DNA of 64,000 nucleotides from Podarcis muralis (lineage: Eukaryota). Positions 1 through 59,416 of this stretch are shown here, piece by piece (the stretch's first letter is position 1; each line of letters starts with the position of its first letter). The stretch is from assembly GCF_964188315.1 (NCBI RefSeq), contig NC_135656.1, positions 21,266,001-21,330,000 on the forward strand, given 5' to 3'. The notes under the pieces are model-generated. The model saw only the letters and a list, made by a program, of their open reading frames with translations. It searched no databases and was not told where the DNA came from. A program made the position numbers and the translations under genes.

Positions 1-959
1 GCAGCTGATGCACAGACCTTCCCCACAAGGTGTTATATAATGCCGTTTCCCATTTTTGCTGCTTTGCTTTTGAGCTGGAAACTAAGGAAGAAATGACTGG
101 ATCCCAGAAAGGCCCACTGCTACACAGTCATGCCACCCCTCAGGACTTTGGGGTGCAGAAGGACACTTACAGAATGAGCAGGAGAGTCCCCCAAATGCAA
201 CAGGGCTGTCATGCCACATTTTGAAGCAAATTAATTGTAATACGTATTCCCACCCAAAGAGCCCCCTATGCCTGGGCAGTTAAGTGCACAGTCTAAAACC
301 ATCACTTTCGGAACCTTCCTTACTTAACCCATATATCCACCAGGCTGCATCGATGGACTCTGCTGCCTTGGAGGCAGGACAGGGGTGGCTATTATTTCAG
401 GCCGAGTCCCTAACTCTGCCCTTTTTGCAAGAGGACCTGGAATTGTGCCTCTCTGGCGCTGCCACCAATTAAATGTCTTGCTATCTTCGGAGGGAGAAAT
501 GCCATCAGAGTGCGACCCTACCTCGGAAACCCTCTTCCCTATTCCCAAGCAGAGAGAGTTCGCAGAGATTTCTGAATATTCAGGGAGTGGGAAAAGGGAC
601 TCTGCACGAGCTCAGAGGCAACCATCTTCATCTGCTCCAAATGATGCGTTTGGGGGCGGGGCTGACTTCATCTTCATCTACCCAGAAGGATCCCCTGGGG
701 GGGGGCTGACTCCAATTGAGCTCTGGCTTGTCTTTCGCTTCATCTTTCTCAGGACCCTCCCACCACCCTAAAGGAGAACCCAGGAATCCGGGGGGCGCCT
801 GCCGCGATTAACCCCTCCCGCCCCGCCCCAGCCACTTAAATCAGCACACAAGGCTGAAGTTCCGTTTTCCGCACAGGATGTGGCCCGGCTTGCCCCCTCC
901 ATCTTCCGAGGAGGACCCAGGCGTCCTGGCACGCCCCCGCCCCCACCCCGGAGCCTCAC

Positions 960-1528
960 CTCTGCTTGAGGGCGGCCAGATCCTCGGCCATGTTGTCCCT
1001 CTCGACCTGCAGGCGGTCGCGATCCTTGCCCAGCGCGTCCACCTGCCTGCGCAGCTCGCGGAGCTCGTCTTGGAAGAGGTCGGCGGCGCGCGTGGGCTCC
1101 TTGGAGCGCGCGTGGCCCAGCTCGGCCAGCAGCGCCGCGTTCTGCGTCTCCAGGTAGCGCACTTTCTCGATGAAGCTGGCGAAGCGGTCGTTGAGCTCCT
1201 GCAGCTCCTGCTTCTCGTTGCTCCGCGTGGCCAGGAACTCCTGGTTCAGCGCCTCGGCTACCGAGAAGTCCAGCTTCTCGGCCGCCCCGTAGGAGTAGCG
1301 CGGAGCCGGCGCGCTGGAGGATCGGAAGGTAACCGCGCCACCGCCGCCACTGGCCCGGTAGGAGCGCATGGATGCCGCCGTCGAGGGCGTGCTCAGCAGC
1401 CGCGTGGCCGAAGAGGACGAGGCCAGGCGGGACGAGGAGTACGACAGCGGGGACAGCATGGGCGGCGGCCCGAAAGTGCGGCGGTACGAGGTGGCGCGGA
1501 TGGCGCCGGAGTGGTGATGGTGGCTCAT
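960..1528 (-). CDS. PRPH: Peripherin (type III intermediate filament), coding part of exon 1
   Basis: Translation [23 protein letters not shown]...[44 protein letters not shown]...[10 protein letters not shown] matches the peripherin head and coil 1A/1B. ATG at 1528. Exon ends AG|GTGAG with the donor at 959. Later exons are not in the window. Confidence 0.95.
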
Positions 1529-1643
1529 GGCGCAGCGGCTGTGCCCGGAGAGAGGTGGAGAAGGAGAAGAGGCGGCGTCGAGGCTGGGACGGAGCCGCGA
1601 AGTTCTCGACGGGGGAAGAAGGCGCCGCCTTCGGAGATGCCGC

Positions 1644-1649
1644 TTTATA
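1644..1649 (-). promoter_or_regulatory. PRPH: PRPH TATA box (TATAAA) in a CpG island (~870-2150)
   Basis: Plus-strand TTTATA at 1644-1649, about 115 nt upstream of the ATG, in GC/CpG-rich context. Confidence 0.8.
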
Positions 1650-1878
1650 GGCCCCCAAGTCGCGAACTGGGGGGGGAGGGCAGCAGCAGCAGCAGGAGGA
1701 GGCTCCACCTCTCTTGGATGCAGCCCAGAGCCCCGCATTGCAGCCCCGTCGTCTGGGAAAGGGAACCACCCCGCCCAGGCTGCTCTGCAAAGATGCTCCG
1801 GCGGGCAGGAAGGGAGGGTGAGTGGGATCCCAGGCGCCCTGCTCGGTCCTGTCCGGTCCACCGCCCTCCATGTCATAC

Positions 1879-2004
1879 GTGCCAACTCCCTGGGTGCACG
1901 AGCACCTACAAAATTCCCCGTGAATGGGCCGGGGCACCCACCAATTTCGGTGCCAGGGCCATGCGCGCTGCATGGCACCCACGGTCGCGGTGCCAAGCTG
2001 GCAC
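1879..2004. repeat. GC-rich GGCACCCA-containing element, copy 1 (upstream of PRPH)
   Basis: Aligns to 58248-58366 (90/107 identical by manual alignment) and to the reverse complement of 24623-24733. Confidence 0.8.
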
Positions 2005-2279
2005 ACCTGCTCCAGGTTGTTGGAGAGACAGAGCATCGCACTGCAGCCCCCCTCCCCCCTCCTATGCAGGTTTCTGTAGAAGTAAATCCCCTCGATTATC
2101 CCCAGCGGACCTGACACCCAGGGCCTTGTAGAGCCAGGCAGAGGCCCGGACCGGGTAGATAATGTGCCCCCCCCCCTTTATAAATAAGTATATAAAAAAA
2201 ATTCACAAAAGTTATGCTGACAAATAATTTTATTTCAAGGCTTGAACCGTATCTGCATACAAAGATAAAATGGAAAATA

Positions 2280-2505
2280 CAGTGGTACCTCGGATTAAGT
2301 ACTTAATTCATTCCGGAGGTCCGTTCTTAACCTGAAACTGTTCTTAACCTGAAGCACCACTTTAGCTAATGGGGCCTCCTGCTGCCGCCACGCCGCTAGA
2401 GCCCAATTTCTGTTCTCATCCTGAAGCAAAGTTCTTAACCTGAAGCACTATTTCTGGGTTAGCAGAGTATGTAACCTGAAGCGTATGTAACCCGAGGTAC
2501 CACAG
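2280..2505. mobile_element. pogo/Tigger-like MITE, family A
   Basis: TIR CAGTGGTACCTCGG...CCGAGGTACCACAG, TA flanks, about 12 related copies in the window. Confidence 0.8.
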
Positions 2506-3084
2506 TATAGATATACAATAGTGAATATGCTGACCGAGGCCCCGTCTGGACCTGCTGACACCGGACTGGGGCATCCAGAAGTATGGAGAAGTATATCGTT
2601 CGCGGTTGGGGTCTCTCTCTACCCAGGGTGGGGGAAGTGCGTGCGTGGGGGGAGCTAGGGCACAGGGCGGTGGACCACCGATTCTCCCCCTAGATCTGTC
2701 GGCAAAAATGGAATGGGTTGGTTAAATATGCCAGGGCCGTGGTTCCCAATTAGTTAAATCCTGTTTTTCCAAAGCCAACCCGTGGACCCCGCTGCTTTTG
2801 AAATATTTTGATTCCTCTATGGTGGTTTTTGTTCAGTGAATGGTGCCACAGTCCCCCCCCCCCCGTGGGTGGGTCACGTGGACCCCTGGGGCCCATGGAC
2901 CACCAATGGGAAACCATTCTGTGTTAGGGGGTTCTGGAGAGGAAGCATGGAGGCAGGCGAACTAAGTGAGATGGGGGAGCCACCATTGCGTGGCAGAAAA
3001 GAGGCATTAAAACTCAGCAGGATAGTTTATTATTATCAGCAGCAGCCGAGCAGGAAGAGTTTTCTGTGGCTCCCTGAAACATAG

Positions 3085-3178
3085 GCTCATAGAATTGTAG
3101 AGTTGGAAGGGACCCCAGGGGTCATCTAGTCCAACCCCCTGCAAAGCAGGAATCTCAGCTAAAGCATCCATGACAGAA
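3085..3178 (-). mobile_element. CR1-like LINE 3' end fragment
   Basis: CATAGAATTGTAGAGTTGGAAGGGACCCCAGGGGTCATCTAGTCCAACCCC resembles the reverse complement of a sauropsid CR1 3' terminus (recognised from memory). Confidence 0.5.
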
Positions 3179-3207
3179 GGCCGGAGCGGGGTGACATTTT
3201 GGCAATA

Positions 3208-3453
3208 CAGTGGTACCTCGGGATGCGAACAGGATCCATTCCAGAGCCCCGTTTGCATCCTGAAGTGAACACAACCCACGTCTGTGCGTGCACAGGACGT
3301 GTTTCTCCGCACATGCGCATGATGTCATTTTGACCATCTGTGCATGCACACACGGCAAAACCTGGAAGTAACGCGCTCCGTTACTTCCAGGTCACCGTGG
3401 AGCGCAACCCGAAAATACTTAACTGGAAGCACATTTATCCTAAGGTATGACTG
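3208..3453. mobile_element. pogo/Tigger-like MITE, family B
   Basis: Ends CAGTGGTACCTC and AGGTATGACTG, TA flanks. Related to 19328-19577 and 27938-28195. Confidence 0.7.
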
Positions 3454-3458
3454 TATTC

Positions 3459-3815
3459 GGGATGCAGGTGGCGCTGTGGGTTAAACCACAGAGCCTAGGA
3501 CTTGCCGATCAGAAGGTCGGAGCTTCGAATCCCCGCGATGGGGTGCACTCCCGTTGCTCAGTCCTAGCTCCTGCCAACCTAGCAGTTCCAAAGCACGTCA
3601 AAGTGCAAGTAGATAAATAGGTACCGCTCCAGCGGGAAGGTAAACGGCGTTTCCGTGCGCTGCTCTGGTTCGCCAGAAGCGGCTTAGTCATGCTGGCCAC
3701 ATGACTTGGAAGCTGTACGCCGGCTCCCTCGGCCAGTAAAGCAAGATGAGCGCCGCAACCCCAGAGTTGGCCATGACTGGACCTAATGGTCAGGGGTCCC
3801 TTTACCTTTACCTTT
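3459..3815 (+). mobile_element. Sauria SINE, full length
   Basis: tRNA-like head with A/B boxes (TGGCGCTGTGG, GCTTCGAATCC), (ACCTTT)n tail, 13-bp TSD TATGACTGTATTC at 3446-3458 and 3816-3828. Confidence 0.9.
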
Positions 3816-4667
3816 TATGACTGTATTCAGACCCAGTGAGCACTCAAGCCATTGCATCTTGCTCCATCTGCACTGCACTGGCTACCAATGAGTTTCCGGG
3901 CCCAATTCAAAGTGCTGGTTTTGACCTATGCAGCCTTAAATGGCTCAGGACCACAGTACCTCAAGGACCGCCTCTTTCCATATGAATCTACCCAGACCCT
4001 GAGATCATCCCTCTTTTGTGTGCCTCCCCCATCGCTTGCTTAATAAGTCACTCTGTGTTTGCCAGCTTCCATCTGAGAAGCGGGAGAGAGAGAGAAATTG
4101 ATCACAACAGCAGCAGCACTGTCAAGTACTTCAACTTGCATATCCAGCAAGCATGAAACTATGGGGATGTACACACAAATGCAAGTCATGGGTGATGCAG
4201 CCAAGAGAGCTCACACCCACAAGCTGACTCACATAGGCCTGGTACCTCATCCAATTTACCAACCTTGCAGTCTGCATAGAAATCAGCTGTGGTTTCAGGG
4301 AGACGTCCATGCCGACAAACCATACGCCAAGAAACCTCTTTAAAATCTCATATGCATATCATATTGCAGTTGGTCTTATCATTCCTGACCTCCGCACATA
4401 TATATATTGGGGGGGCTAGTTTTTTTGGAGCTGTAGAGCTGCATCAGAAAACTTTGACAGAAGCCCTTTCTTTTTCTCCCCCCCCCCCCATGTAATATTT
4501 TTTTATTATTTTACATAAAGTTATACACAATAACCATAACCATTCCAAAACATGAGAATAGAGAAGGTTCTTTCAAACCTTCGGACCTCCTTCCCTCCCT
4601 CCGTGGGTCCCATTTCAAAAAGTTTAATCTGTTTTCCTGAATCTTTTACCTTTCTCAATCTATTATT

Positions 4668-4730
4668 TAATCCGTGTTTATGGAAGACAATCTTACTCGA
4701 CTGTGAGTGATCGCCAAAGGAGAAGACGAC
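4668..4730 (+). mobile_element. RTE LINE extreme 3' tail only
   Basis: CCGTGTTTATGGAAGACAATCTTACTCG...GAGTGATCGCCA is nearly identical to the 3' end of the RTE at ~10086-10143. Confidence 0.7.
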
Positions 4731-4989
4731 CTAATACTGTACCTCTCTGACTGGCACAAAAAGGGGGAAATAGAAATCTACTCCCTTATGGCAACACCAC
4801 TCATACAATCCATCAGCCTGCCAGAGGGAGTACTCTCAGTGGGGGGGCGGAGGGTGGGGAGGGAGGAAAGAGGGGGGGAGAATAGCTGGAGGGGTTTGTC
4901 CAGTTCTTGACCACCTGCTGAGGTTGCCAATATCTAATTAATACCAGATACAGAATAGATGCCCATTTAATGGGGCCTTCCAGGCTCTC

Positions 4990-5510
4990 AGCCGAGTAAC
5001 GTCAAGAGCTGGAATATTTTGAGATCTAACAAAACCTGTTTCATATGTGGCATGCCATGGGAGCACAGCCGTGTTTATATTGCAAGAAAAATCCAACTTC
5101 TCTGCCCAGGAGTGTTGAGCTGTACAGTCTCTGTCAGCTGAGATATCAAAAATGCACCGAAATGGCAAAAGTGACCAGAAAGCTCAGGAACCAAGAAGAC
5201 AAAAACTTTAAGAAAGAATGGGGGGAAATTACAATTTATTTAGGAGACCACTGTAAGCAGATGTAAACATTGGAATGATTTTAATAACACTTGTAATGTA
5301 ACAAACACTGTGGATAATATGGAGAGATACAATATATGGATTGTGAAATAATATGCAGTTGAAGATGTTGACAATTGGACCAACGGAGGGTAGGTGGGAA
5401 GTTGGGAGACTCAGAGAAATCTCAATATATGGTTATGTATTTGGTATTGTTATAACTTTTTGTTTGTAAAATCAAATACATATTTTTTTTACAAATAAAA
5501 TAAAATAAAA
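4990..5510 (+). mobile_element. L1-like LINE 3' fragment, degraded
   Basis: Remnant ORF2 C-terminus (EMAKVTRKLRNQEDKNFKKEW) and A-rich tail. Similar pieces at ~8640-9050 (-), ~22000-22300 and ~49050-49290. Confidence 0.6.
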
Positions 5511-6084
5511 TGCATATGCATATGCATATTTACTTATCTTGGCTTAATTTAATCTAAGTGGGTTTTCCTGGGGGGAAGTGGTGTCAACATTGTAAAGCAT
5601 TCTGAACATGGAAAGTATAGAAATCGTAGCAAAGATGTGCCCAAGATTTGATGGTGGGTGGGTGTCATATCATAGCAAGCATAGAATGAGCTGTGTAATC
5701 AGATTGCCAAGCATTTCCTGCAAACCCCTCTGGCTCTTAATGATTAATGGAGTTTAGCTTTAAAAAAACAACAACAGGAAAAAAGAACCTAAGAGATCTG
5801 ATCCCTCATCAGCAGGAAGTGCTGAAGACAAAGAGGGAGCCAGACAGCCGCAGATTAAAAGACAAGCAAAAAATAAAACCCTGCCCTTGCTATTATTACA
5901 GTTCTTATTCCCTGGCTGCTTGAGACACACACTAAAATATATCCCTCCTCAAGAGCAGTTTATAAAATCGGCTGAGGTAGAATATAGTTCCACTGGTACT
6001 GCTGATCTCATCGCCTGGCAAGCGATGTGATGTTGGGGCAGCCTTCCTTAAGCTGGTGCTGATTTTGCCTTCCTGAACATTTAC

Positions 6085-6502
6085 TGAATGGGACCACATA
6101 ACACGGTCCTGAAAGACCTGCATTGGCTCCCAGTATGTTTCCGAGCACAATTCAAAGTGTTGGTGCTGACCTTTAAAGCCCTAAACGGCCTAAGCCCAGT
6201 ATACCTGAAGGAGCATCTCCACCCCCATCGCTCAGCCCAGACACTGAGGTCCAGCTCTGAGGGCCTTCTGGCGGTTCCCTCCCTGCGAGAAGTGAGGTTA
6301 CAGGGAACCAGGCAGAGTGGTGCACGCCCTGTGGAACACCCTCCCATCAGATGTCAAGGAAATGAACAACCATCTGACTTTTAGAAGACATCTGAAAGCA
6401 GCCTTGTTTAGGAAAGTTTTTAATGTTTGATCATGTTTTTAATATTCTGTTGGGAGCCACCCAGAGTGGCTGGGTAAACCCAGACAGATAGGCAGGGTAT
6501 AA

Positions 6503-6547
<45 letters not shown>

Positions 6548-6548
6548 A
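6085..6548 (+). mobile_element. L2 LINE 3' fragment with (GTT)n tail
   Basis: LHWLPVCFRAQFKVLVLTFKALNGLSPVYLKE, an L2-type ORF2 C-terminus, ending in a simple-repeat tail. Confidence 0.75.
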
Positions 6549-6590
6549 TATGAGGGGTGGAAAACTTGTGTTCCTCCTGATGCTCTAAAG

Positions 6591-6841
6591 CAGGGGTCAG
6601 CAACCTTTTTCAGCCATGGGCTGGTCCACTGGCCCTCAGACCATGTGGTGGGCTGGACTATTTTTTTTGGGGGGGGGATGAACGAATTCCTATGCCCCAC
6701 AAATAACCCAGAGATGCATTTTAAATAAAAGGACACATTCTACTCATGTAAAAATATGCTGATTCCCGGACCGTCTGCGGGCCGGATTGAGAAAGCGATT
6801 AGGCCGCATCCGGCCCACGGGACTTAGGTTGTCTACCCCTG
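6591..6841. mobile_element. hAT (Charlie-type) MITE
   Basis: CAGGGG...CCCCTG ends with 8-bp TSD CTCTAAAG at 6583-6590 and 6842-6849. Confidence 0.85.
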
Positions 6842-7794
6842 CTCTAAAGGCTCCAACTCTTCATTCGCAGCCAGCAGGGATGATGGTAGTTGGAGTCCCA
6901 ACAACATTTGGAGGGCCACAAATTCCCCACTCCTGGTTTACTCCATCATGGAGCAGGGGAAATGGCTCAGTCGTTTGTGGTGATAATAAATGGCTCCATG
7001 CGAACAACTTGCCTCACAGTGATAATGGACCCCACCAGTTTTAGGTGGTCATTAAAATATTTCTGTATCGCTTTTCATTTACAAAAAGAATTAGCGAAGT
7101 GGTTCACGCTACGAATCTGACAGAGAAGGAGAATTAAATATCCAGTACCAATAATCACCGACAGGGTCAGTAAAAATAATCGCAATGGCCAAAGACATCA
7201 GGAACTGCTATCAATAATATTAAAGGTCAAGGAAAGACTAGGGAAAGAGGAAGGTCTTCGACCGGCAATGAAAACACCCTGCAGTTGGAGCAATTTTTCT
7301 TTTTACGTATTATCTAGTTCATATCCTGCCCTTCTTCCTGAAATGTCCTCAGAGTGGTATAAAGTATAAATTTGGCTCTAAAGTAATAATGCTTCATTTA
7401 AATCAAAATAGATTTCTTGCGTTAAACAAACTTTTAATTGTGGTTTTTGACCACTGAAACTATTATGTTTCATCAGAGGTTGTGGGAATTGGCCCTGGAT
7501 GCCTTTTGTGGCTCTATGAACCCATGCATGGGGTATGTGGGTGTCTAGAGAGCAAGGATAAAAAGAAGCTGACCAATGGATCGTGAGCCTTGGAGCAAAT
7601 GAGGTGGGTGAGAGAGGCTTGGGTGCAAATTCCTGCTCAGCAGCCACTGTCCTGCATGAGCTTTGGATAAATCTCCCCTTCTTTCTTTCCTACTTCTTCA
7701 GCTCTGAAACAGACAATATGAGCAACATACTAATGTGAAGACCAGAGAGGCAATTGGGGTGGCGCCTTTGAAAGTGTGAGGGAGGTAATAAATA

Positions 7795-8003
7795 CAGTGG
7801 TACCTCGGGTTAAGAACTTAGTTCGTTCTGGAGGTCCGTTCTTAACCTGAAGCACCACTTTAGCTAATGGGACCTCCCGCTGCTGCTGCGCCACTGCCAC
7901 ACGATCTCTGTTCTCATCCTGAAGCAAAGTTCTTAACCCGAGGTACTATTTCTGGGTTAGCGGAGTCTGTAACCTGAAGCGTCTGTAACCCAAGGTACCA
8001 CTG
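7795..8003. mobile_element. pogo/Tigger-like MITE, family A
   Basis: CAGTGGTACC...GGTACCACTG with TA flanks. Confidence 0.8.
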
Positions 8004-9419
8004 TAAAAGGAAATGACTATTTACAGGGACAGCTCAGAGAGGGCAGACTCAATTCTACTCACCTGCCTTGTGTTCCAGAAAATGCTTTTGAGCACAATAC
8101 AGGGCCAGTCCTGCCATTGGGCAGAGAGAAGCATCCGCCTCATGCAGCAGTTGCTAGAGGTGGGGAGATATTGTAGGGCAGTCTATTCCAGTGGGGCCTC
8201 TAAGCTGCTGCTGCTGCTGCTCAGGAAGAAGCTGACCTCTCAACACTGCCAAAATGCTACTGTCAACCCAGTTGATTTCTCAACACGAAGTTGGGGTGCC
8301 ATCTTGCCCTTTGCCTCAGGCAGCAAAAAGTTTTGGGTCGACCCTGCCTTAGGGAAAGAGTGGCCAGTTGTTATTCTTCATATAATACCATTGCCGTCTG
8401 TACCACTCTGCCGAATAACAGAAACAGATACCTCCCCTGGGGAGCTTATAATCTAAATGTTGATGGGGGGGGGGGATAGCAGAAGGAGGAGGAAGGGAGA
8501 GCAGAGAGGAAAAGGCGACAAAAATGCTTAAATCAAGAAAGAATATGCCTCAATGCCCTTGTACTTGGGGGTAGTTTCGGTAGAGCTTGAGGACTAAAGA
8601 GTTAAGCCAATATAACAAAATAGGTTTTAAAGGAGGATTTCATTTTTATTTTTATTCTGAAATCATTTTTATTTGATTTTACAAATATAAGTTTATAACA
8701 ATACCAAATACATATCCATATAAAGAGATTTCTCTGAATCTTGAGACTTCCCTCCATCCCCTACATGGGTCCTATTGTCAACATTTTCAACTGCATATTA
8801 TTTCATAATCTATATTTTGTTTCCATCCATATTTATCCAGTTTTTGTTACATTACAAATGAGATTAAAATCCTGCTAATGTTTTCATCTGCTTACAGTGG
8901 TCTCCTAAATAAATCGTAATTTCCCCCCATTATTTTTTAAAAATTTTGTCCTCTTGGTTCCTGAGCTTTCCAGTTTGCCATTTCAGTGCAGTCCATCAGC
9001 TTAGTTTGCCATTCCTTTCTGGTAGAGACTCTTCTTTCCATCTCTGGGCTAGTAGCATCTGTGCTGCTGTTGTCGCACACATTTAAAGGAAGATTTGAAA
9101 GAAGATGAATCATTTGCGAGAGGGGGAGATCTTAAAGCAGCTGAAGGTTGCAGAATTTGGGGTGGGTGGGGAGAAAAACAAATTAAATGAGCAAAAGTCA
9201 TGGGTGGGGATGTGAGATAAATGGGATAAGCATAGAGACAATGTAGGCCCAACTCTAGGTTTGTGTCCTCTGCTGGTCTTTCCAGCAAGCTTATTGGGCA
9301 GTAACAGGGATGAGTGGCAGAGGATGGTGATGAAGGCTGGTGGCATTGCTGATGAGAACCACCCCATGTTTCTCTCGGTAGTATCCTACGCTGCACCTGA
9401 GCTCTGCGATTGCAGCTTT

Positions 9420-10145
9420 CTCCCATTTGAAGTGCAGAGTGTTTGAGGACCGGGACATTCGCAGGGAAACCAGAATGCTTGTTTACAAAGCTACTGTGCT
9501 ACCAACCTTACTGTATGCTTGTAAAACATGGACCACTTATAAACGCCATCTCCAACTCCTTGAAAGATACCATCAATGGTGTCTCCAAATAATTTTACAC
9601 ATCACTTGGGAAGACAGGTGGACTAATGCCAGGGTACTGGAAGAAGCAAAGATCACCAACGTTGAAGAAATAATCCTTCAACATCAACTTCGTTGGACTG
9701 GTCATGTTGTTTGGATGCCGGATTATTGTCTTTCCAAAGCAACTACTCTATTCCAAACTTAAAAATGGTAAGTGTAATGCTGATGGTCAACAAAAGAGGT
9801 TCAAAGGCTCTCTCAAGGCAAATCTTTAAAAAATGTAGTATAAACACCGACAACTGGGAAACACTGGCCTGCGAGCGCTCCAGTTGGAGAACAGCCTTTT
9901 CCAAAGGTGTCCTGGGCTTTGAAGACACTCAAACTCAGGACGAAAGGGAGAAATGTGCTAAGAGGAAGGCATGCTTGGCAAACCCTCACCGTGATCAGCT
10001 CTCATCCGGAAACCTATGTCCCCACTGTGGAAGGACATGTGGATCCAGAATTGGCATCCGCAGTCACTTACAGACTCACTGCTAAATCCGTGTTTATGGA
10101 AGACAATCTTACTCGCCTCGAGTGATCGCCACAGAAGATGATGCT
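9420..10145 (+). mobile_element. RTE-clade LINE 3' fragment, frameshifted
   Basis: VYKATVLPTLLYACKTW...QLRWTGHV...CPHCGRTCGSRIGIRSHLQTH (post-RT domain plus C2H2 finger), followed by a GAT-repeat tail. Confidence 0.8.
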
Positions 10146-11893
10146 GAGACAGGGCATGGGAAGTTGAGTGGGCCTGCTGGCTATCTTACTGTATTTACTC
10201 GAATCTGATGCTCACCTTCTTACCTTCTTTTGGCCAAATTGTGTTGCAAAAATTAAGGTGCACAATAGATTTGATGGCCCATTTACATTTGCCAGCAATT
10301 ACTTTTTGGGGTTTCAAGGTTCTGAAAACTGAGATCCGATGGCACGTTAGACTTGAGTAAATCCAGTAATTCCCACACAAGGCCTCTGGGGCCCCATTTT
10401 GGATTATTATAAAAGGTGCAGTAGAAAAGGCTTAACAATGGGACGTACAGAGGGGGAGGAGAAAGTCCAGAGATTCGTCGGAATATTATATTTTTGGATG
10501 TGTTGTGGTATGATTGCAAATTCGAATATGTAAAACCAAATAATATTTTTTTTGGGGGGGAAGGGAATAAAAAAAAGATTTTTTAAAAAAGCCAACGACA
10601 GCAACAGCAACACCCCCTCCCCCCAAAAAACCCTGAACACAACACCCCGGGCCCTTCGTGCACGCTAACAATAAAAGCTAATCCCACTTTCCTGATGCTG
10701 CTGATGGTTTTGATGTTAGTGGTACCACCACTCTAATTTGTCTTGGGACAGATTATGAGGTCGGCATGATGCGATGCGGGCACAGAAACCGATTAATCAT
10801 TCCTGAAACAAAAGCTCTGAGGAGGAATGCAGACAATCAGTGGTGGACATTTCTGAGATCACTCATTCTCGGAGAGGTCTATCTGCCATTCCCTGCAGCT
10901 CTAGTCTGCCTGCCACTGCCGCCAGCCGCCAGCCAGGCCCCCTCCCAACTGCGAACTCTGCCAGCTACTTACGGGAAAGCCGAGCAAATGAATATATCTG
11001 CTGAGGGACTTGAAATGTGCCCAAAGGACAGCTAAAGGGGAGGGAGAGGGCAGCGAGCGAGCGAGCGAGCGAGCGAGCTAGAAGCAGAGCAACGGAAACA
11101 TCCGTGAAATGGCAACTATATTGGATTTTCAGCCTTAATGGATCCGCCACAGCCACACCGGCCTGGGGGAAAGGGTTTTGCTAAAGGAAGGGTGCTGAAT
11201 CAAGTGGAATCCTCCTTTTTATTTTTATTTTAAAATGTTGCTTGTTGGGGAAACAGGAAAGGACATGCTTGCATGTGCCAGCAATAATAATAAAATCATT
11301 TTTGGGGGGCAGTGTTAGAAACTGGGATAGAAAAGCTAGGAGCCAAATGGCTCCTGGGACCTGGGTTGTGGGTGCCAAAACAGAATGTCTAGTTGCCATT
11401 TGGGGGGGGGGGTGTCAGCAACACTTTCTATTTATTATTTTGATAAGCATGAACTACGTAATACACAATTCACGTAAGTGACACAATGCTAATATCACAT
11501 TTTAAACGGAAATTGTTAATACGTGTTTAATTTGGTGTTAGCGATAAAAACATTGGTACCGTACTTCAGTTTTCGAAACACTGCACTCTTTATTGTTAAA
11601 CTCCTTAACATATTGTCTGTCCTTAACATATACTTTGAGGCTTAAAAGCAAAGATATTTCAGTAATCCTTAAGTGTCAGAGCACAAAATGGCACCCAGAC
11701 TTTTTGAGGTGCTTGCAAATGGAGAATCTTTAGGTGCAAAATGCGCCTAGCACCCTGCTAATTTCGAACCCTGTTGAAGGGGCAAGTTGTGCCTCACATA
11801 TTAAGCTGGGGGGGGGGATAGCAGTATATAGAATCAGGGAAGTTCTGGGTTTGTGGGCTCAGCTGCCACATCTGAGCGGTGAGTTTTATTCTA

Positions 11894-13925
11894 TTTTTTT
11901 TAAATAAATTTTTATTGATTTTCCAACACAAATTAAAAACAAAACAATACACAATACATAAACAAACAAACATATAAACATGTATAATTTCAAAACCTCT
12001 TTTTCATAAACCTTACTTCCCGGACTTCCCCATGCCTCCCCTTTTCTGCATCCTTGTTTTAATATTTCTTCAGCAACCCTTCAGTTAACTAATTACTCAT
12101 TTCCTTTTTTACCTTCTTCTCTTACTTAATCGATTACAGCTGTAATTCTATATTTTCCATTCCCTTGACATTTTAGCACTCATTAATTTTGCAACAGTTC
12201 TTAAGATATATTTTAAATTTCTTCCAATCTTCCTCCACCGTCTCTTTTCCTTGGTCACGGATTCTGCCAGTCATCTCCGCCAGTCCCATATAGTCAATCA
12301 CCTTCGTCTGCCATTCTTCCAGCGTGGGTAGTTCTTGTGTCTTCCAATACTTTGCTAAGAGAATCCTTGCTGCTGTGGTAGCATACATAAAAAACGTCCT
12401 ATCCTTCCTTGACACCAATTGGCCGACCATGCCCAGGAGAAAAGCCTCTGGTTTCTTATGAAAGGTACATTTAAGGACCTTCTTAATTTCATTATAGATC
12501 ATTTCCCAAAAGGCCTTAATCCTCGGGCACGTCCACCAAAGGTAATAGAAGGTGCCTTCAGTCTCATTACATTTCCAGCATTTATTATTGGGCAGATGAT
12601 AAATTTTTGCAAGCTTGGCTGGGGTCATGTACCACCTATAAATCATTTTCATAATATTTTCTCTTAAGGCATTACATGCCGTAAACTTTATACCGGTGGT
12701 CCATAACTGTTCCCAGTCAGCAAACATAATTTCATGACCAATGTCTTGTGCACACTTAATCATGGCTGATTTGACTATTTCATCTTGTGTATTCCACATC
12801 AACAGCAGGTTATACATTCTTGACAAATTCTTAGTATTGGGTTCTAACAATTCTGTTTCTAATTTTGACCTCTCCATCTGGAAGCCAATTTTCCTGTCTT
12901 GTTTGAACACCTCCATTATTTGATGATAATGAAGCCAATCTCGTACTTTAAACTTCAATTTCTCATAACTCTGTAGTTTAACTTTTTCACCATCTTGCTC
13001 TAAAATTTCACAATATTTTGGCCATTTAGATTCCATATTAAGTTTTTTCACCTCCTTGGCTTCCATTGGTGACAACCACCTAGGGGTTTTGTTTTCCAAC
13101 AAATCTTTATAACGAGTCCAAACATTATATAGTGCTTTCCTAACAATATGGTTTTTGAACCCTTTATGAGTTTTTACCTTGTCATACCATATATATGCAT
13201 GCCAACCAAATCTATTGTCAAACCCTTCCAGATCCAAAATGTCTGTGTTCTCAAAAAGTAGCCAGTCTTTCAACCAGCAGAAAGCTGCCGATTCATAATA
13301 CAGTCTTAAGTCCGGCAGGGCAAACCCCCCCTCTCTCTTTTGCATCAGTTAATATCTTAAATTTTATTCTGGGCTTTTTGCCCTGCCAGACAAATTTGGA
13401 TATATCTTTCTGCCACTTCCTGAAACAGTCCATTTTGTCCACAATCTGTAATGTCTGAAACAAAAATAACATTCTAGGCAATACATTCATCTTGATAACA
13501 GCAATTCGGCCTAACAAGGAAAGTCTCAAACTTGACCATATTTCTAGATCTTTTTTTACCTCTGTCCAACATTTATCATAGTTATCTTTAAATAAGTTCA
13601 CATTCTTAGATGTCAAGTTAATCCCCAAGTATTTCACTTTCTTTGCCACAGTTAATCCCGAGGTTTCACTCTGAAACCTCTCTTTTTCAACATTTGTTAG
13701 ATTTTTCTCCAGTACTTTAGTTTTTTGCTTGTTCAACTTAAATCCTGCTACTTGACCAAATACTTGAATTAATTCTAAAACTCTTTTCGTTCTAGTGTCT
13801 GGCTGTTGCAATGTCAATACTAAGTCATCTGCAAAAGCCCTCAGTTTATATTGTTTGGCTCCAACCTGAACTCCTTTGACCAGCTGGTCCCCTCTAATCA
13901 TATTTAACAAAACCTCCAAGACAGA
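11894..13925 (-). mobile_element. 5'-truncated L1 LINE (~2 kb of ORF2 and 3' UTR)
   Basis: RT motif LRAFADDL, C-terminal CWKC...LWWTC, one frameshift near 13330, A-rich tail, 7-bp TSD TATTCTA at 11887-11893 and 13926-13932. Confidence 0.85.
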
Positions 13926-14025
13926 TATTCTAAGCACCCCGAAGACAATTACGAGCATCCTGCAATGCCAGACCCTCCAAGTGTCCCTGTTTTCAAGAGA
14001 TGTCCCTAATTTAGAGAAGCCATCC

Positions 14026-14407
14026 TTGTTGTTGTTTAGTCGTTTAGTCGTGTCCGACTCTTCGTGACCCCATGGACCAGAGCACACCAGGCACTCCTGT
14101 CTTCCACTGCCTCCCGCAGCTTGGTCAAACTCATGCTGGTAGCTTCGAGAACACTGTCCAACCATCTCCTCCTCTGTCGTCCCCTTCTCCTTGTGCCCTC
14201 CATCTTTCCCAACATCAGGGTCTTTTCCAGGGAGTCTTCTCTTCTCATGAGGTGGCCAAAGGATTGGAGCCTCAGCTTCAGGATCTGTCCTTCCAGTGAG
14301 CACTCAGGGCTGATTTCCTTAAGAATGGATAGGTTTGATCTTCTTGCAGTCCATGGGACTCTCAAGAGTCTCCTCCAGCACCATAATTCAAAAGCATCAA
14401 TTCTTCG
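14026..14407 (-). mobile_element. BovB (RTE) 3' fragment inserted in a MITE
   Basis: LKLRLQSFGHLMRREDSLEKTLMLGKMEG...VHGVTKSRTRLND plus (CAA)n tail. It splits a CAGACCCTCCAA-ended MITE spanning about 13970-14450. Confidence 0.85.
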
Positions 14408-23257: not shown

Positions 23258-23749
23258 CGCTGCCCCCCACCCCACTTCCCGCAGCGCATCACCACCAATG
23301 GGGAGCAGCAGGAAATAGATACCGGCGGGAAGAGCAAGGGCGCTAAGCGCATTTTGCGCAGGGGCGGGTCGCTTTTTGTCCAACATATTTAATTGCCTGC
23401 CGGAAGAATAACGGTCTGTTAAGCCCCACGAATATCCCTCTGGTTAGGTTGGAACTGAGTTTCCAAATAAACAGGCTTCCGCTCTTTGAACAGCTATATG
23501 GGGGGGGGGACTTAAAGTAGGGCTGTCACACGTCCGGATCGCCCCGGACATTACGGAGGGGGGTAATTGACCCGGGGGTGGGGATCTCTAAAAAGCGGCT
23601 CTTTGTCCTGGATCTTCGGCAAATCGCGGGGTTTTTTTAGTGCTTTGGTAAGAAAAAGTTCGACGGTTTTGGGGGCGTCCTGGTTTTTACTTTTTGGAAA
23701 TATGGCAAACCTACTTGAATGAAACATTTGGAGGTGGCGGTGGGGGGGA

Positions 23750-23997
23750 CAGGCTAAGCCCCGCCCCACATCCTCCATCACGTGGCACGGTGCACGCACA
23801 CCATTTGAATGGCAATGTCCATCAACCATAGGAGCCAACTCCTAGGGGTCTTCGGACGCCCTTCGATAAAATATTTTAAGGGGTTTAAGCCCCCCACCCC
23901 AGTTTATATGGCCCCCCACCAGTTTATAGACATTGCCATTCAAATAGTGTGCGTGCACCGTGCCACGTGATCGAGGATGCGGGGTGGGGCTTACCTG
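23750..23997. repeat. Inverted repeat, ~70-bp arms with ~110-bp spacer
   Basis: 23750-23819 is the near-perfect reverse complement of 23929-23997. Confidence 0.85.
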
Positions 23998-24258
23998 CCC
24001 CCCCCCAGTATTTTATTCAAGTTGGCACCCCTGCCATCAGTTTGGGGGGGCCCAGATATTTTCTTGGAGGGCCAATTTTGGGGGGGGCACAGAACCTTAG
24101 TTAAGTATTTTTATTGATCTGTGGTGGCAGCTGCTCTCCCCTTGGCTACGCCCTTGGCTCCTATGAATTCCTCTGTGAAAAACGGGGTCCTTGTCCTCCC
24201 CCCCCCCCCCTCCATTCATGGCGGTAGCCGCTTCTCCCCTCCTCATTCGCTGGCCCGC

Positions 24259-24376
24259 CCGCCTTCCCCTTTCGGGAAATTCGAACCCGCCAATCAGGGG
24301 CCGGTGAAGGGGCGGCTCTTTCTCCCTCCGCCAAGCCCCGCCCCTGCTGTGACGACACGCTCCCAGCCCTATAAAA
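24259..24376 (+). promoter_or_regulatory. Tubulin copy A promoter (CCAAT at 24290, GC boxes, TATAAAA at 24370-24376)
   Basis: Motifs are visible and the block is conserved with the copy B promoter. Confidence 0.85.
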
Positions 24377-24520: not shown

Positions 24521-24523
24521 ATG
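24521..24523 (+). CDS. TUBA1C: Copy A exon 1 (ATG only)
   Basis: GAAAC ATG|GTAAGT, the canonical vertebrate alpha-tubulin first intron position. Confidence 0.9.
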
Positions 24524-24622
24524 GTAAGTAGCGAAGAGGAGGAGGAGGAGGCTTGGAGACAAAGGCTTCGCGGGGGTTCGTGCCTGGGGACCAGGAAAGC
24601 GAGGTTGGGGGGGGGTGCAGCG

Positions 24623-24733
24623 GTGCCAATTTGGCCCCACAAGCGTGGGTGCCCATGCGACGTGCATGATCCTGGCACCCAGGTTAGTGGGTGCTCTCCA
24701 CGGGGAACTTTGTGGGTGCTCGGGCATCCAGGG
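24623..24733. repeat. GC-rich GGCACCCA-containing element, copy 2 (copy A intron 1)
   Basis: Its reverse complement aligns with 1888-2004 and 58257-58366. Confidence 0.75.
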
Positions 24734-26355
24734 CCATGGGGCGTGAGGCCAGGAGTCGTGCGATGGAGCTGCGCCCTGTGGGTGTCGGTAGCCAGCTCGG
24801 GGCTCCCGGGACGCGGGTGTCGAGGAGCGGATGGGGGCCAAAAGGCGCTGGCTGCCTTCTCCTCCCTCGTTGTCCCAGGAGGAGCTCCATCCCGGGGTGG
24901 GGCGCCACCCCCCGGCTCCCGGGAAGAGCGTTTCCGCGTGTAGGAAATCGCGCCGCGCAGACACGTGTCCGCCTGTGCGCACATCCGGAGGAGCGTTGCC
25001 CGAGTCGTTTCCGCGCAATGGATTGGGGGAGCGAGTGGCCTGAAACTTGCGCGCACGCGGTGGGACGCCCAGCTTCCTTGGTGTAGGAAAAGCCCCTAAA
25101 GGGCCTTACTCGTCTCTTTAACCTTTAACGTGCCATTTAGAAGCATAAACGCGCCATTTAGAAGCATGTGCCTCATTTGCCCGGGTTCTGATATTTTTTT
25201 GGGGGGGGTGCGCTTGGGATTCAATTGCGTCTCTACGGGGCTTGTTAGGATCAGTGCCGGAAGCGGGTTCTGGGGTGCGTTGCTTAGTCCAGTCAGTACC
25301 AAACGAGACCATGAGAATATCTGAATAGTCTCTGTGCGCCTCGATTTATCCTTTCTGGGAAATGGGCCTATGGAACACAAGGTCATTTGCCAAAAATCCT
25401 CCGGAAGCGTGCTTCCGGAACCTTAAGCAGCAGGATGTGGCCGCTTAAGCCCGGCATGGCAGCCTCTTCCACACCCATGTGCGTAGCCAAGGGGGGTGGG
25501 GTAGGTGAGGTCAACTGCCCGCCCCCCAGATCAAGTAAAACAATAGAAATACTTAAGTGGCGAATCACGTAGGTTTTGTCCCCCTGACAAAAGGCCTGCC
25601 TCCCCCGCCCCACAAAATTCCTGGTTACTCCTATGTCCAGAACTTTTTTTTCTTGCTTCCGTAACTACGTGTTGAGTCACTTCTTCCAAGCAGAGTTGGA
25701 AAGCGAGAGGCCAAGGCGAGCGGCCCACCAGAGAGAACGCGCGGGAAGAGCCTTGTTGAATAACCAGCTTGTTGCGTCATTTCCCCGGGCGGTTGAATGC
25801 AGAACCTTGTGCGCTTCATTTGCCTGTTGGCAAAAGAAGGAAACGCTGCAAACCAATCCTGCCCCCCCCCCCCATGCAAGAAGAAATAAACACACACTCT
25901 TGTCCCCAAATGCCCATTGCAAATCGGCCAAGCTAAGCGGCTTAGGTTGCGCTTAAGAGGCATCCTTAGGCAAGGTATAATCCTTTTTGGGGTTGGGTCG
26001 CATCTTGAAAGCAAAAGTGGCCAAGTTTGAACTTGCCAGCTGCGAAGCTTGGCTCTGGCAAATAGATACTGCATAGAAGGGGCATTATGTGGCATTGCAT
26101 AATGTCCAGCTACCAGCAGGCAGGGCAAAATGGCTTAAAAGTTGCTGGAAAGCAAGGCGTGTTCAGCCAAAGTGAGTTAGGAGGGACAGATCTTCAAAGG
26201 GCATAACAGCTCCATTTTGTGGCTCGGTTGAAATACAAAAGATGCAGTTCCAGCATCAGTTGTTGTTTTTAAATTAAGAGCTTACTCAAAACCGAGCTGT
26301 TGAGTAGACTTTTAATTTTATCTTTCAAATCTGAGTAACTGGAGCATGGAAACAA

Positions 26356-29783: not shown

Positions 29784-30006
29784 CGTGAGTGCATCTCCAT
29801 CCATGTTGNNNNNNNNNNNNNNNNNNNNNNNNNNNNNNNNNNNNNNNNNNNNNNNNNNNNNNNNNNNNNNNNNNNNNNNNNNNNNNNNNNNNNNNNNNNN
29901 NNNNNNNNNNNNNNNNNNNNNNNNNNNNNNNNNNNNNNNNNNNNNNNNNNNNNNNNNNNNNACGTGCCCAGGGCGGTCTTTGTGGACTTGGAGCCAACTG
30001 TGATTG
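29784..30006 (+). CDS. TUBA1C: Copy A exon 2 (interior unsequenced)
   Basis: TTTGTAG|CGTGAGTGCATCTCCATCCATGTTG (RECISIHV) ... [16 protein letters not shown]|GTGAG; total span 223 nt. Confidence 0.9.
29809..29961. other. Assembly gap, 153 N
   Basis: Run of N inside exon 2. Confidence 1.
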
Positions 30007-30079: not shown

Positions 30080-30259
<180 letters not shown>

Positions 30260-33627: not shown

Positions 33628-34677
<1,050 letters not shown>

Positions 34678-34758
34678 TTTCTGTGTGTATCCGTTTGTTT
34701 TCTACTTCTCGCTCCTGTCTCCTGCTGCATGCCTTCTGCTCCCCATTGTGTTAGACTC

Positions 34759-34764
34759 ATTAAA
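34759..34764 (+). terminator. Probable polyA signal ATTAAA, copy A
   Basis: About 80 nt after the stop, followed by a T-rich tract, and conserved in copy B. Confidence 0.6.
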
Positions 34765-56185: not shown

Positions 56186-56679
56186 TCAGAATTTATATCT
56201 TCTTCAGGAGTGCCCATCTTCTAATCTAGATGCTAATGGGTAGATGTTTCGAAACCAACTATTTTGAATTCCTGACTAGATTAGGCTTGCTGTAGCTGGT
56301 TGTTTGCCATGGAGGCAGTATTCAGCAACAGCTGAAAACAGAAGAGAAGGCTACCCACACGACAGATCCAAGGCGGGGTGGGGCTTACCTGCCCCCACCC
56401 CGAATATTTTATTGAAGTTGGCATCCCTGGTGCAGACGTATATAAACTTTATGAAGTAAATAAATCACTACTTACTGAGCAGCCTCATACATTTTTATTG
56501 ATGCTGCAACTGCATCTTGAGTACTTTACTACATCCCTTTTCGATTATAAAAATTCTACCTTCCATTGTCCTTCCTTGACTCTGGCTGTACGTGCCACAC
56601 CTTCCAGCACATGTTAAACGAACTTTCGTCCTTTTCACCAGCAGCTGGGCATTATGCAATGCCGCAGAAAGCCCCTTAT

Positions 56680-57040: not shown

Positions 57041-58247
57041 TTCTTTGCAAGAGCAGCTGGCAAGTCCAAACTTGGCCACTTTCGCTTTCAAGATGCTACG
57101 CAAGCCCAAAGGAGCTTGCCTTTTAAGTGTTACCCAAAACAGCTTAGGCCGGCACTTTTGCAATGGGCATTTGGAAACAGAGCGGTTTTTAGAGAGCTGT
57201 GATTTGGAGAAGCGCTCTGATTCACAGCACTTCCTTCTTTTAACCAATAGCCAAAATAAGCAAGCACAAGTTTGGTTCTCCGACAGGCCCCTTCCACCAC
57301 ATTCTCTGCACCCTGCTTGTGTAGATCTTTTGAACCCGGCTGCGTTAAGCGTCTTAGCATGCCGTGTCCAAAGTCAAGAAGGGAGATGGTGCCAGGAAAC
57401 TGTCATTCTGAGCTTAAGAGGGTCACGTCCTGCCGCTGAGCATTGCAAAAGCAAGATAACCGCGCAGTCTGGAGGATTTTGGAAAGAGCTTATTTGCAGA
57501 TCCACGGAGACCCATTTCTCAGAATGAGTAAAGGGAGGCTTCTAGCAACCCCTCCCTGTTTCTCGCACATACGATTATCCTCCTGGGCCTGAGTTGTTGC
57601 TCCTTGACTACCCATGAATCCTGCTTCAGGCTTATCTCCTACCAGGCTCTACAGAGCTGCAAGAGAGCAACAAATACACTCCAAACCCTCTCCCCCAGGA
57701 TTATCAGTATCCAGCGCCTGACTCAGGCAGGGAAGGCACCTCATGTCAGCTAAATCGAGATTCAGAAAAGTTCCCCAGAGCTGGGTTCGCCCATTGGGTG
57801 GGAGTGGATGTCTATTACTATTATATTATTATTATAATTATACATGAGGAAGCTGGCAACAGAGCTGCGCATCCTGCCCACATACCTAAACCTCAGCGCG
57901 TTAGTTTGCTCACCCCACCCTTGGCGTGCAAAATCAAGACATCAGCCCAGCAGACACGTGTCTGCGCGTTACGATCCCCACGTCCTACACGCAAGTGCTC
58001 TTCCCCCGATGTTTTTTTTGTTTTCCTAAGCGCTGGGCCCCATCGCAGGAGTCAGAGAAAAGCTCCAGCGCAGCCGCGATGGGGCCAGGGGCCATCTCCC
58101 GAGGGGAAGGGAAGGGCGACTCGACGCCACACCTCCCCATTCACACGAGATCTCAACCTGGCGCCCTTCAGCCACACCCATGACCGGCTTTCCCGCTACA
58201 CACGTGTTCCGGGAGACCCAGCTGGCTGCCAACACGCGAAGGACACG

Positions 58248-58366
58248 GTGCCAACGCCCTGGGGTGCCCGAGTATCCACAAAATTGCCCACGAAGGGGCC
58301 AGGCACCCACAAATTTCGGGGCCAGGGCTGTGCACGCTGCATGGCACCCACGGGCCCAGCTGACAC
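58248..58366. repeat. GC-rich GGCACCCA-containing element, copy 3 (copy B intron 1)
   Basis: About 84% identical to 1879-1984. Confidence 0.8.
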
Positions 58367-58505
58367 AGTCCTGCGCGCCTTCCCAAGACCCACGAGGAAA
58401 CACGCATTGCGCTTTAACCAGCCTTGTTTCCCCTTTCCCAAGGCACCAAAATCCCCAGAACCGAAGCCGAGGTGAGGCTACAGGAGCATCCGACCCAAGA
58501 CTTAC

Positions 58506-58508
58506 CAT
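58506..58508 (-). CDS. TUBA1C: Copy B exon 1 (ATG only)
   Basis: GAAAC ATG|GTAAGT on the minus strand. Confidence 0.9.
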
Positions 58509-58681
58509 GTTTCCCGGCAGGCAGGATAGAGACCAAACAGATAAAGGAGAAAGAGAAGGCTGAGAAACGGGATGAGCTCCGCCTTCCTCACGAACCGACC
58601 CGTTCAGGGAGTCGCCAGTGAGCAAAAACTTCTTCCCAACTTCAGCACTTTGCCGCGGGTGGGGGGGGGGGTGGCTTTTAC

Positions 58682-58816: not shown

Positions 58817-59416
58817 GGACGAGCGAGCTCAGAATTCGAACCCAGACCCGAGCTAAAGGCGCTTTCTACCTCCACGAAACAGAGTTGGGGTGCCAACTTG
58901 AATAAAATATGCGGGGGGGGGGCAAGCAGGTAAGCCCCGCCCCGCGCAATCGATCACAAGACACAAACACACACCCAATGGCTATGCCCAGCAACTTTGG
59001 GGGGGGGGTGTCAGCCCCCTCAAATATTTTATATGGGGTGGGGGGGAAAGGACCACAGCCCCGCGCTTCCCATGCCTGCAAATGAAAGCATGTCTTACTT
59101 GCAAGTTAATTCCATCTTAAATAACAGAACTTATTCTTATCTGAGCCAGCTCTTCCTGCCTGTGGTTCTGGAGGGATGTGTTGGGCCATGACTGAAGTAT
59201 TGGACTGAGCACAAAGACTTGATTGTCGTCCTGTACTTCCCACAGATCTTCCTACTATTATCATAAAGGTAAAGGGACCCCTGACCATTAGGTCCAGTCG
59301 TGGCCGACTCTGGGGTTGCGGCGCTCATCTCGCTTTATTGGCCGAGGGAGCCGGCGTTTGTCCACAGACAGCTTCCGGGTCATGTGGCCAGCATGACTAA
59401 GCCGCTTCTGGCAAAC

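What the first reader, a model, noticed from the sequence alone, without database searches (positions are those of the whole stretch)
1879..2004. One ~110-125 bp GC-rich element at the 5' ends of all three cytoskeletal genes
Seen: the segment 230-360 bp upstream of the PRPH TATA box aligns to copy B intron 1 (58248-58366; 90/107 identical by hand, ~84%) and to copy A intron 1 (reverse complement of 24623-24733). All three copies have the same orientation relative to their gene's transcription, lie within ~400 bp of the start, and occur nowhere else in the window that I could find. The element carries repeated GGCACCCA/TGGGTGCC and TGCCA/TGGCA motifs and a short hairpin (CCATGC-GCGCT-GCATGG in the PRPH copy). 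It has no TSD or tail, and at most a 6-bp GTGCCA/TGGCAC terminal inversion. The PRPH copy appears closer to copy B than the two tubulin paralogues are to each other, which shared tubulin duplication alone does not explain. Known: peripherin and alpha-tubulins are neuronal cytoskeletal genes induced during axon growth, and TGGCA is an NFI half-site. Inference: a shared cis-regulatory module co-ordinating intermediate filament and microtubule genes, or an uncharacterised repeat that survives only in unmethylated CpG islands.
Basis: partly seen in the sequence, partly recalled or inferred. Interest (0 to 1): 0.75.

Follow-up and report, generated by a model that had tools for sequence, protein, structure and literature searches.

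The report
Small hAT-like transposon near three genes
The shared 130-bp GC-rich element is a small cut-and-paste transposon (a MITE with inverted ends and an 8-bp target duplication). It landed once in the peripherin promoter of lacertid lizards and once, earlier, in a tubulin intron that was later duplicated, so it is ordinary mobile DNA and not a designed regulatory module.

Summary
The three copies are real and far beyond chance: P-B 82%, P-A 78%, A-B 70% identity, with BLAST E-values of 1e-21 to 1e-26. All three lie antisense to their gene, within about 400 bp of the start. The window is Podarcis muralis.

The PRPH copy is a 136-bp unit (1874-2009). Its ends are inverted (CATACGTGCCAAC / CAGGTGTGCCAGC) and it is flanked by an 8-bp direct repeat, CTCCATGT / CTCCAGGT.

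Rhineura, Hemicordylus, Elgaria and Heteronotia show the uninterrupted empty site, with one copy of that 8-mer inside a conserved PRPH promoter block. Zootoca carries the insertion.

The two tubulin copies count as one event, because the whole 5' regions of the two TUBA1C-like genes are paralogous over about 650 bp.

A related ~200-bp repeat with the same termini and 8-bp TSDs sits upstream of both tubulin promoters and 3' of PRPH.

Best reading: a non-autonomous hAT-like MITE that inserted twice into open promoter-proximal DNA. The repeated GGCACC/GGTGCC motifs are probably subterminal transposase-binding repeats. Co-option as a regulatory element is not excluded but has no support here.

The parts
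1866..1873 (.). Left target-site duplication, CTCCATGT
   Evidence: The single-copy target A(A/T/G)ATGGAG is seen in the outgroups.
1874..2009 (+). PRPH-promoter copy of the 136-bp MITE. The 5' tip is CATACGTGCCAAC and the 3' tip is GCTGGCACACCTG. It contains two 41-bp-spaced internal repeats (GGCACCCAC ... CGGTGCCA).
   Evidence: The orthologue is present in Zootoca (L002 10064-10205).
2010..2017 (.). Right target-site duplication, CTCCAGGT (7 of 8 identical to the left copy)
58242..58373 (+). Tubulin B intron-1 copy. It is antisense to the gene, and its reverse-complemented 3' end reads CAGGACTG...
24618..24747 (-). Tubulin A intron-1 copy. It is antisense to the gene, and its reverse-complemented 3' end reads CAGCGGTGCCAA...
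23827..24034 (+). Related ~200-bp MITE ('R' family: CATAGGAGCCAACTCC ... CAAGTTGGCACCCCTG) with TSD CCATCAAC / CCATCAGT. It is nested inside an inverted R copy that spans roughly 23710-24085, about 340 bp upstream of the tubulin A TATA box.
58883..59040 (-). R-family copy about 200 bp upstream of the tubulin B TATA box, paralogous to the one upstream of tubulin A
56372..56429 (+). 3' fragment of an R-family copy in tubulin B intron 1
959..1528 (-). Peripherin exon 1 (190 codons). The TATAAA box is at 1649-1644.
   Evidence: The exon is 100% identical to the P. muralis peripherin protein.
24521..24523 (+). ATG-only first coding exon of tubulin A (TATA box 24370-24376). Later exons are at 30104-30265 and 33703-34674.
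58506..58508 (-). ATG-only first coding exon of tubulin B (TATA box 58689-58683). Later exons are at 48466-48239, 46990-46829 and 46241-45270.

Best explanation
The element is a non-autonomous cut-and-paste DNA transposon, a 130-136-bp MITE, most likely of the hAT superfamily.

Two insertions account for the three copies.
1. An older insertion landed in intron 1 of an ancestral TUBA1C-like gene. It was copied when that gene and its whole 5' region were duplicated into the present tail-to-tail pair A and B.
2. A younger insertion landed in the peripherin promoter. It dates from after lacertids split from amphisbaenians and before the Podarcis-Zootoca split. It duplicated the 8-bp target ANATGGAG.

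Shown here: the inverted termini, the TSD, the empty sites, the A/B paralogy and the related family.

Inferred:
- Mobilisation in trans by a hAT transposase.
- The repeated GGCACC/GGTGCC motifs act as subterminal transposase-binding repeats and not as host transcription-factor sites.
- The position near transcription starts reflects the preference of hAT elements for open, nucleosome-poor promoter DNA.
- The PRPH copy is closer to both tubulin copies because it is younger and so nearer the family consensus.
For: TSD and termini.
- An 8-bp direct repeat (7 of 8 identical) abuts the homology boundaries exactly, and the tips are inverted.

Empty site.
- In Rhineura, Hemicordylus, Elgaria and Heteronotia the conserved PRPH promoter reads ...CCA(A/G)CA-A(A/T/G)ATGGAG-GGTGG... 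without interruption.
- Podarcis reads ...CCAACA-ACCTGGAG-[136 bp]-ACATGGAG-GGCGG....
- The element is present at the same site in Zootoca at 94.5% identity.
- It is absent from 10 kb upstream of PRPH in five non-lacertid squamates.

Homology limits.
- P shares nothing with A or B beyond the element, whereas A and B are homologous over about 650 bp (58193-58826 against 24825-24247, 61% identity).

Related family.
- The R family shares both termini with P: 17 of 21 nt at the 5' end and 14 of 17 nt at the 3' end.
- It also shares internal sequence (local alignment z = 8.7 and 7.0 against shuffles; nhmmer E = 0.011).
- It has its own 8-bp TSDs and a nested copy.
- It is absent from the non-lacertid loci.

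Site patterns.
- Counts are 81 invariant columns, 7 P-only, 21 A-only and 21 B-only.
- Only 3 of the P-only changes predate the Podarcis-Zootoca split. The inserted P sequence was therefore nearly identical to the A/B ancestor, as expected for copies of one master.

Motif density.
- GGCAC/GTGCC occurs 6 times in 136 bp, against 2 per kb in the window.

Literature.
- hAT elements make 8-bp TSDs and carry subterminal repeats bound by the BED domain (PMC10368747).
- The hAT element TcBuster favours transcription start sites and CpG islands (PMC3499496).
- hAT is the dominant DNA-transposon group in a lacertid genome (PMC9498476).
Against: - No autonomous partner encoding a hAT transposase with these termini was found in the roughly 330 kb examined.
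- The tips fit the hAT YARNG rule only in part (CATAC at the 5' end, CAGGT at the 3' end).
- The TSD fits nTnnnnAn at only one of the two diagnostic positions.
- No TSD can be recovered for the old tubulin insertion.
- Genome-wide copy number is unknown. Only two independent insertions of this exact subtype were seen, and no further copy was found in about 26 kb of extra P. muralis and 37 kb of Zootoca sequence.
- The P copy changes about half as fast as intergenic DNA between Podarcis and Zootoca (8 differences in 145 bp, against about 11.5% elsewhere). It has 7 changes against 21 in each of A and B, and this is not explained by CpG decay. Some constraint on P is therefore possible.
Confidence: 0.84

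Rival explanations
1. The element began as a transposon but has since been co-opted. It would supply the same transcription-factor sites (for example CACCC boxes or NFI half-sites) to peripherin and the TUBA1C-like genes, giving lacertid-specific co-regulation.
For: - The P copy has been retained at least since the Podarcis-Zootoca split at 94.5% identity, similar to the adjacent promoter and exon 1 (93.7%) and above intergenic DNA at about 88%.
- P has 7 changes against 21 in each tubulin copy.
- All copies sit in CpG-island DNA within 400 bp of a transcription start.
Against: - Zootoca deleted 32 bp, including the 3' terminus.
- A and B are only 70% alike, which is no better than other unconverted parts of their 5' regions and introns.
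- There are only two independent events.
- The motif repeats are explained by the architecture of a transposon end.
- Slower change is expected in any unmethylated promoter island.
- No expression or binding data could be obtained.
Confidence: 0.1
2. The PRPH copy is a patch copied directly from tubulin intron 1. Possible routes are ectopic gene conversion, a templated insertion at a break, or the relic of a lost third tubulin gene.
For: - The copies lie within 57 kb of each other.
- In human, TUBA1C lies just upstream of PRPH in the same orientation (from memory).
- The left TSD of P resembles the flank of A at 5 of 8 positions.
Against: - Homology stops at the element ends.
- No tubulin exon remnants occur between 2 and 24 kb of the window, or upstream of PRPH in other squamates.
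- The TATA-like run at about 2180 lies inside a Podarcis-specific retroposon insertion.
- The patch has its own inverted tips, an 8-bp TSD and relatives elsewhere.
- P shares derived changes with neither A nor B (21 against 21).
Confidence: 0.04
3. The element is a small structured RNA gene or other non-coding RNA present in three copies.
For: The CCATGC-N5-GCATGG hairpin is kept in A, and in B through G-U-compatible transitions.
Against: - There is no Rfam match at gathering score in the window. Only chance-level hits (E above 1) fall around the element.
- The fold is no more stable than shuffled sequence (z = -1.47).
- Indels of 7 nt occur inside the element in A and B.
Confidence: 0.02

Closest known systems
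Non-autonomous hAT transposons (hAT MITEs, for example the MER5/MER20-type hAT-Charlie MITEs of mammals and the hAT-N families of squamates)
   Same: - Size of 130-210 bp with short imperfect terminal inverted repeats ending CAG...CTG.
- An 8-bp target-site duplication.
- Repeated subterminal motifs.
- Nested insertions.
- Insertion close to gene starts.
- hAT is the main DNA-transposon group in lacertids (PMC9498476).
   Different: - No matching autonomous element or transposase was seen.
- The tips match YARNG only partly.
- The sequence is unusually GC- and CpG-rich.
- Whether this family is already in Dfam or Repbase could not be checked. Its terminal strings occur in no paper in the searchable library.
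Transposon-derived cis-regulatory elements spread to several genes (for example MER20 in the mammalian endometrial network; from memory)
   Same: The same mobile sequence sits next to the starts of functionally related genes.
   Different: There are only two independent insertions, no evidence of binding or activity, and partial deletion in Zootoca.
Pack-type hAT elements carrying captured CpG-island DNA, noted elsewhere in this genome by this scan (unchecked notes)
   Same: The same genome and probably the same superfamily, with CpG-rich content.
   Different: The tubulin copies include both transposon termini. They are therefore insertions and not the source of captured cargo. The element is ten times shorter.

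Membership tests
hAT superfamily, non-autonomous element | 8-bp target-site duplication | tested here: met
   CTCCATGT / CTCCAGGT flank the P copy. The single-copy target is seen in four outgroups. An R copy has CCATCAAC / CCATCAGT.
hAT superfamily, non-autonomous element | Short terminal inverted repeats | tested here: met
   GTGCCAACT / AGCTGGCAC, 9 nt at 89%. From the tips, 9 of 13 positions match.
hAT superfamily, non-autonomous element | Tips of the form 5'-YARNG and target pattern nTnnnnAn | tested here: inconclusive
   The reverse-complemented 3' ends read CAGGT (P), CAGCG (A), CAGGA (B) and CAGGG (R). The 5' end reads CATAC. The TSD has T at position 2 but G at position 7. The target pattern is taken from PMC10368747.
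hAT superfamily, non-autonomous element | An autonomous relative with the same termini that encodes a BED/DDE/hATC transposase | not testable with these tools
   None was found in the window or the 7 loci. No eukaryotic genome search was available.
Interspersed repeat family | Many dispersed copies at unrelated sites | tested here: inconclusive
   Two independent insertions of the 136-bp type and at least 4 sites of the related R type were found in about 90 kb of P. muralis sequence.
Conserved cis-regulatory module | Presence at orthologous positions across related lineages | tested here: not met
   Present in Zootoca only. Rhineura, Hemicordylus, Elgaria and Heteronotia show the empty site, and Pogona lacks the element.
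Conserved cis-regulatory module | Factor binding or reporter activity | not testable with these tools
   No expression or chromatin data could be reached.
Segmental-duplication or gene-conversion patch | Homology continuing into the flanks | tested here: not met
   For P against A or B, homology ends at 1866/1879 and 2010/2013. It is met only for A against B, over about 650 bp.
Known RNA family (Rfam 15) | Covariance-model match at gathering score | tested here: not met

The most novel reading that the evidence does not exclude
A lacertid-specific MITE hopped locally within the TUBA1C-PRPH neighbourhood and was then kept in the peripherin promoter because it supplies the same factor-binding repeats as the tubulin intron copy. 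This would wire an intermediate-filament gene and microtubule genes into one lineage-specific response. The roughly threefold slower change of the PRPH copy would be the trace of that constraint.
Probability: 0.07. Interest if true: 0.5.

Novelty: new member of a known kind. Interest (0 to 1): 0.2.

Why it matters
This result removes an attractive but unsupported story of co-ordinated cytoskeletal gene control and replaces it with a documented transposon insertion. The documentation is a textbook set: filled site, empty site, TSD and inverted tips, dated to the lacertid stem.

It also shows that promoter-proximal CpG islands in this lizard collect small hAT-like elements. This matters for repeat annotation, because GC-rich MITEs in promoters are easily mistaken for regulatory conservation. 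It also matters for any later study of transposon-derived regulatory DNA in squamates.

Tried and rejected
1. Relic of a lost TUBA1C-like gene upstream of PRPH. Rejected.
- There is no homology beyond the element.
- There are no tubulin exon traces.
- The TATA-like run at about 2180 belongs to a Podarcis-only retroposon insertion.

2. Structured RNA. Rejected by Rfam at gathering and at relaxed thresholds and by folding.

3. CpG decay as the cause of the faster change in A and B. Rejected: 0-1 CpG transitions.

4. Fetching tubulin intron 1 from other lizards. The exon-4 search returned only non-squamate cluster representatives.

5. Looking for extra copies through translated ORFs. No candidates were found. 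The test has low power, since even the window's own ORF is not in that collection.

7. Earlier-findings look-ups by place, sequence and motif word gave nothing for this element.

8. A full-text search for the terminal strings found no paper.

The costly representative-protein search was not used.

Full report
**Setting**

The window is Podarcis muralis. Positions 1-11738 are 100% identical to GCA_964188315.1 OZ076955.1.

- Peripherin exon 1 lies on the minus strand, with the ATG at 1528-1526, the splice donor after 959 and TATAAA at 1649-1644. It is 100% identical to the P. muralis peripherin protein.
- Two alpha-tubulin genes lie tail to tail. Gene A is on the plus strand: TATA 24370-24376, ATG-only exon 24521-23, last exon 33703-34674. 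Gene B is on the minus strand: TATA 58689-58683, ATG 58508-06, last exon 46241-45270.
- Both proteins end in the TUBA1C-type tail.

**The observation**

Ungapped identities are P-B 82%, P-A 78% and A-B 70%. BLAST E-values in 1-kb comparisons are 7.5e-26 and 1.4e-21. A profile built from the three copies finds nothing else in the window at a meaningful score. All three copies are antisense to their gene and lie in the three GC-rich islands of the window. The core of the observation therefore stands.

**Two events, not three**

A and B are homologous across their whole 5' regions (58193-58826 against 24825-24247, 61% over about 650 bp), with the element at the same relative place. Further patches of 70-90% identity run along the promoters and introns. 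The tubulin copies are therefore one insertion inherited through gene duplication. Homology between P and either tubulin copy stops at the element: 1879-2010 against B and 1866-2013 against A.

**What the element is**

A weak profile hit in the Zootoca PRPH locus (E = 0.011) led to a second, ~200-bp repeat, called R here. Its copies are at:
- window 23827-24034, nested in an inverted copy spanning about 23710-24085;
- window 59040-58883;
- window 56372-56429;
- 3' of PRPH in both lacertids.

R begins CATAGGAGCCAACTCC and ends CAAGTTGGCACCCCTG. These ends are inverted with respect to each other, and R is flanked by 8-bp direct repeats such as CCATCAAC / CCATCAGT.

The P element has the same two ends, matching 17 of 21 nt at the 5' end and 14 of 17 nt at the 3' end. 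It also shares internal sequence with R (local alignment z = 8.7 and 7.0 against dinucleotide shuffles).

Read with those termini, the P copy is 1874-2009. Its tips are CATACGTGCCAAC and, reverse-complemented, CAGGTGTGCCAGC. It is flanked by CTCCATGT (1866-1873) and CTCCAGGT (2010-2017). A and B keep recognisable 3' tips (CAGCGGTGCCAA, CAGGACTG), so they too are whole elements and not a host sequence that was captured.

**Empty site**

The PRPH promoter can be aligned across squamates up to exactly this point.

- Rhineura, Hemicordylus, Elgaria and Heteronotia read ...CCA(A/G)CA A(A/T/G)ATGGAG GGTGG... without interruption.
- Podarcis reads ...CCAACA ACCTGGAG [136 bp] ACATGGAG GGCGG....
- Zootoca has the element at 94.5% identity but has lost 32 bp, including the 3' tip and one TSD copy.
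- None of the five non-lacertid loci holds the element within 10 kb upstream of PRPH.

The insertion therefore dates from after the lacertid-amphisbaenian split and before the Podarcis-Zootoca split.

**Why P looks central**

Site patterns are 81 invariant columns, 7 P-only, 21 A-only and 21 B-only. Of the P-only changes, only 3 predate the Podarcis-Zootoca split. The sequence that entered the PRPH promoter was therefore almost identical to the ancestor of A and B. This is what two copies of one master element would give, with P the younger. CpG decay does not explain the longer A and B branches. A lower rate or some constraint at P therefore remains possible.

**Mechanism**

An 8-bp TSD, short inverted tips ending CAG...CTG and repeated subterminal motifs are the signature of hAT elements (PMC10368747).
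- GGCAC/GTGCC occurs 6 times in 136 bp, against 2 per kb in the window. There are also two 41-bp-spaced repeats.
- A hAT element tested in human cells favours transcription start sites and CpG islands (PMC3499496).
- hAT is the main DNA-transposon group in a lacertid genome (PMC9498476).
- Unchecked notes of this scan also list many hAT MITEs in this genome.

The superfamily assignment rests on TSD length and tip form only. No transposase-bearing relative was seen.

**Limits**

- No eukaryotic genome-wide DNA search was available.
All protein searches were made on single exons or ORFs by reference. The joined step was left out, which is why tubulin introns of other lizards could not be fetched.
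- For the empty-site alignment, one row was the Podarcis sequence with the element cut out. One search repeats the result with unaltered references only.

**Verdict**

This is an ordinary, previously unremarked MITE of a known kind. The regulatory-module reading is not supported, although co-option cannot be excluded.

Noticed in passing
window 33677-34878 and 46267-45067; also 30094-30525 and 47000-46581: The two tubulin genes are 97.4% identical from the last exon into the 3' UTR (4-fold sites K = 0.05, one amino-acid difference) and 90% identical around exon 3. Their promoters and intron 1 are only 61-85% alike. This is a clear gene-conversion tract between inverted paralogues. Both carry the TUBA1C-type tail ...[15 protein letters not shown].
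   Followed up: partly
window 23710-24085: One R-family MITE is inserted into another, inverted, R copy, with TSD CCATCAAC / CCATCAGT. It lies about 300-650 bp upstream of the tubulin A TATA box. A paralogous R copy lies about 200 bp upstream of the tubulin B TATA box.
   Followed up: partly
window 2119-2562: A Podarcis-specific insertion of about 444 bp that is absent in Zootoca. It contains a SINE-like unit (about 2270-2500) and an A/T-rich run, and is flanked by the direct repeat GGACCTGACACC / GGACCTGCTGACACC. The TATA-like run at about 2180 is part of it.
   Followed up: partly
L002 10064-10205 and 10231-10321: The Zootoca orthologue of the PRPH-promoter element has a 32-bp deletion that removes the 3' tip and one TSD copy. 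About 90 bp of extra sequence lies between the element and the proximal promoter.
   Followed up: no
window 1400-1873: The proximal PRPH promoter is alignable at about 69-73% across Gekkota, Scincoidea, Anguimorpha, Iguania and Amphisbaenia. In the deepest alignment it reaches right up to the insertion point, including an invariant GGAGGG(T/C)GG block at the target site.
   Followed up: partly
window 12176-14303 (-): Two long ORFs, one with a reverse-transcriptase domain (RVT_1, E = 5e-8), lie in an AT-rich stretch with strong strand skew. This looks like a LINE between PRPH and tubulin A.
   Followed up: no
window 29809-29961: A run of 153 N interrupts tubulin A just before the remaining part of exon 2. 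Only codons 62-77 of that exon are readable. It was left untouched.
   Followed up: no
L001 10001-28085; L002 10001-26591: The annotated peripherin models of P. muralis (541 aa) and Zootoca (629 aa) are much longer than the 463-475 aa of other squamates, and their gene ranges span 17-18 kb. This suggests read-through or mis-joined 3' exons in the annotations.
   Followed up: no
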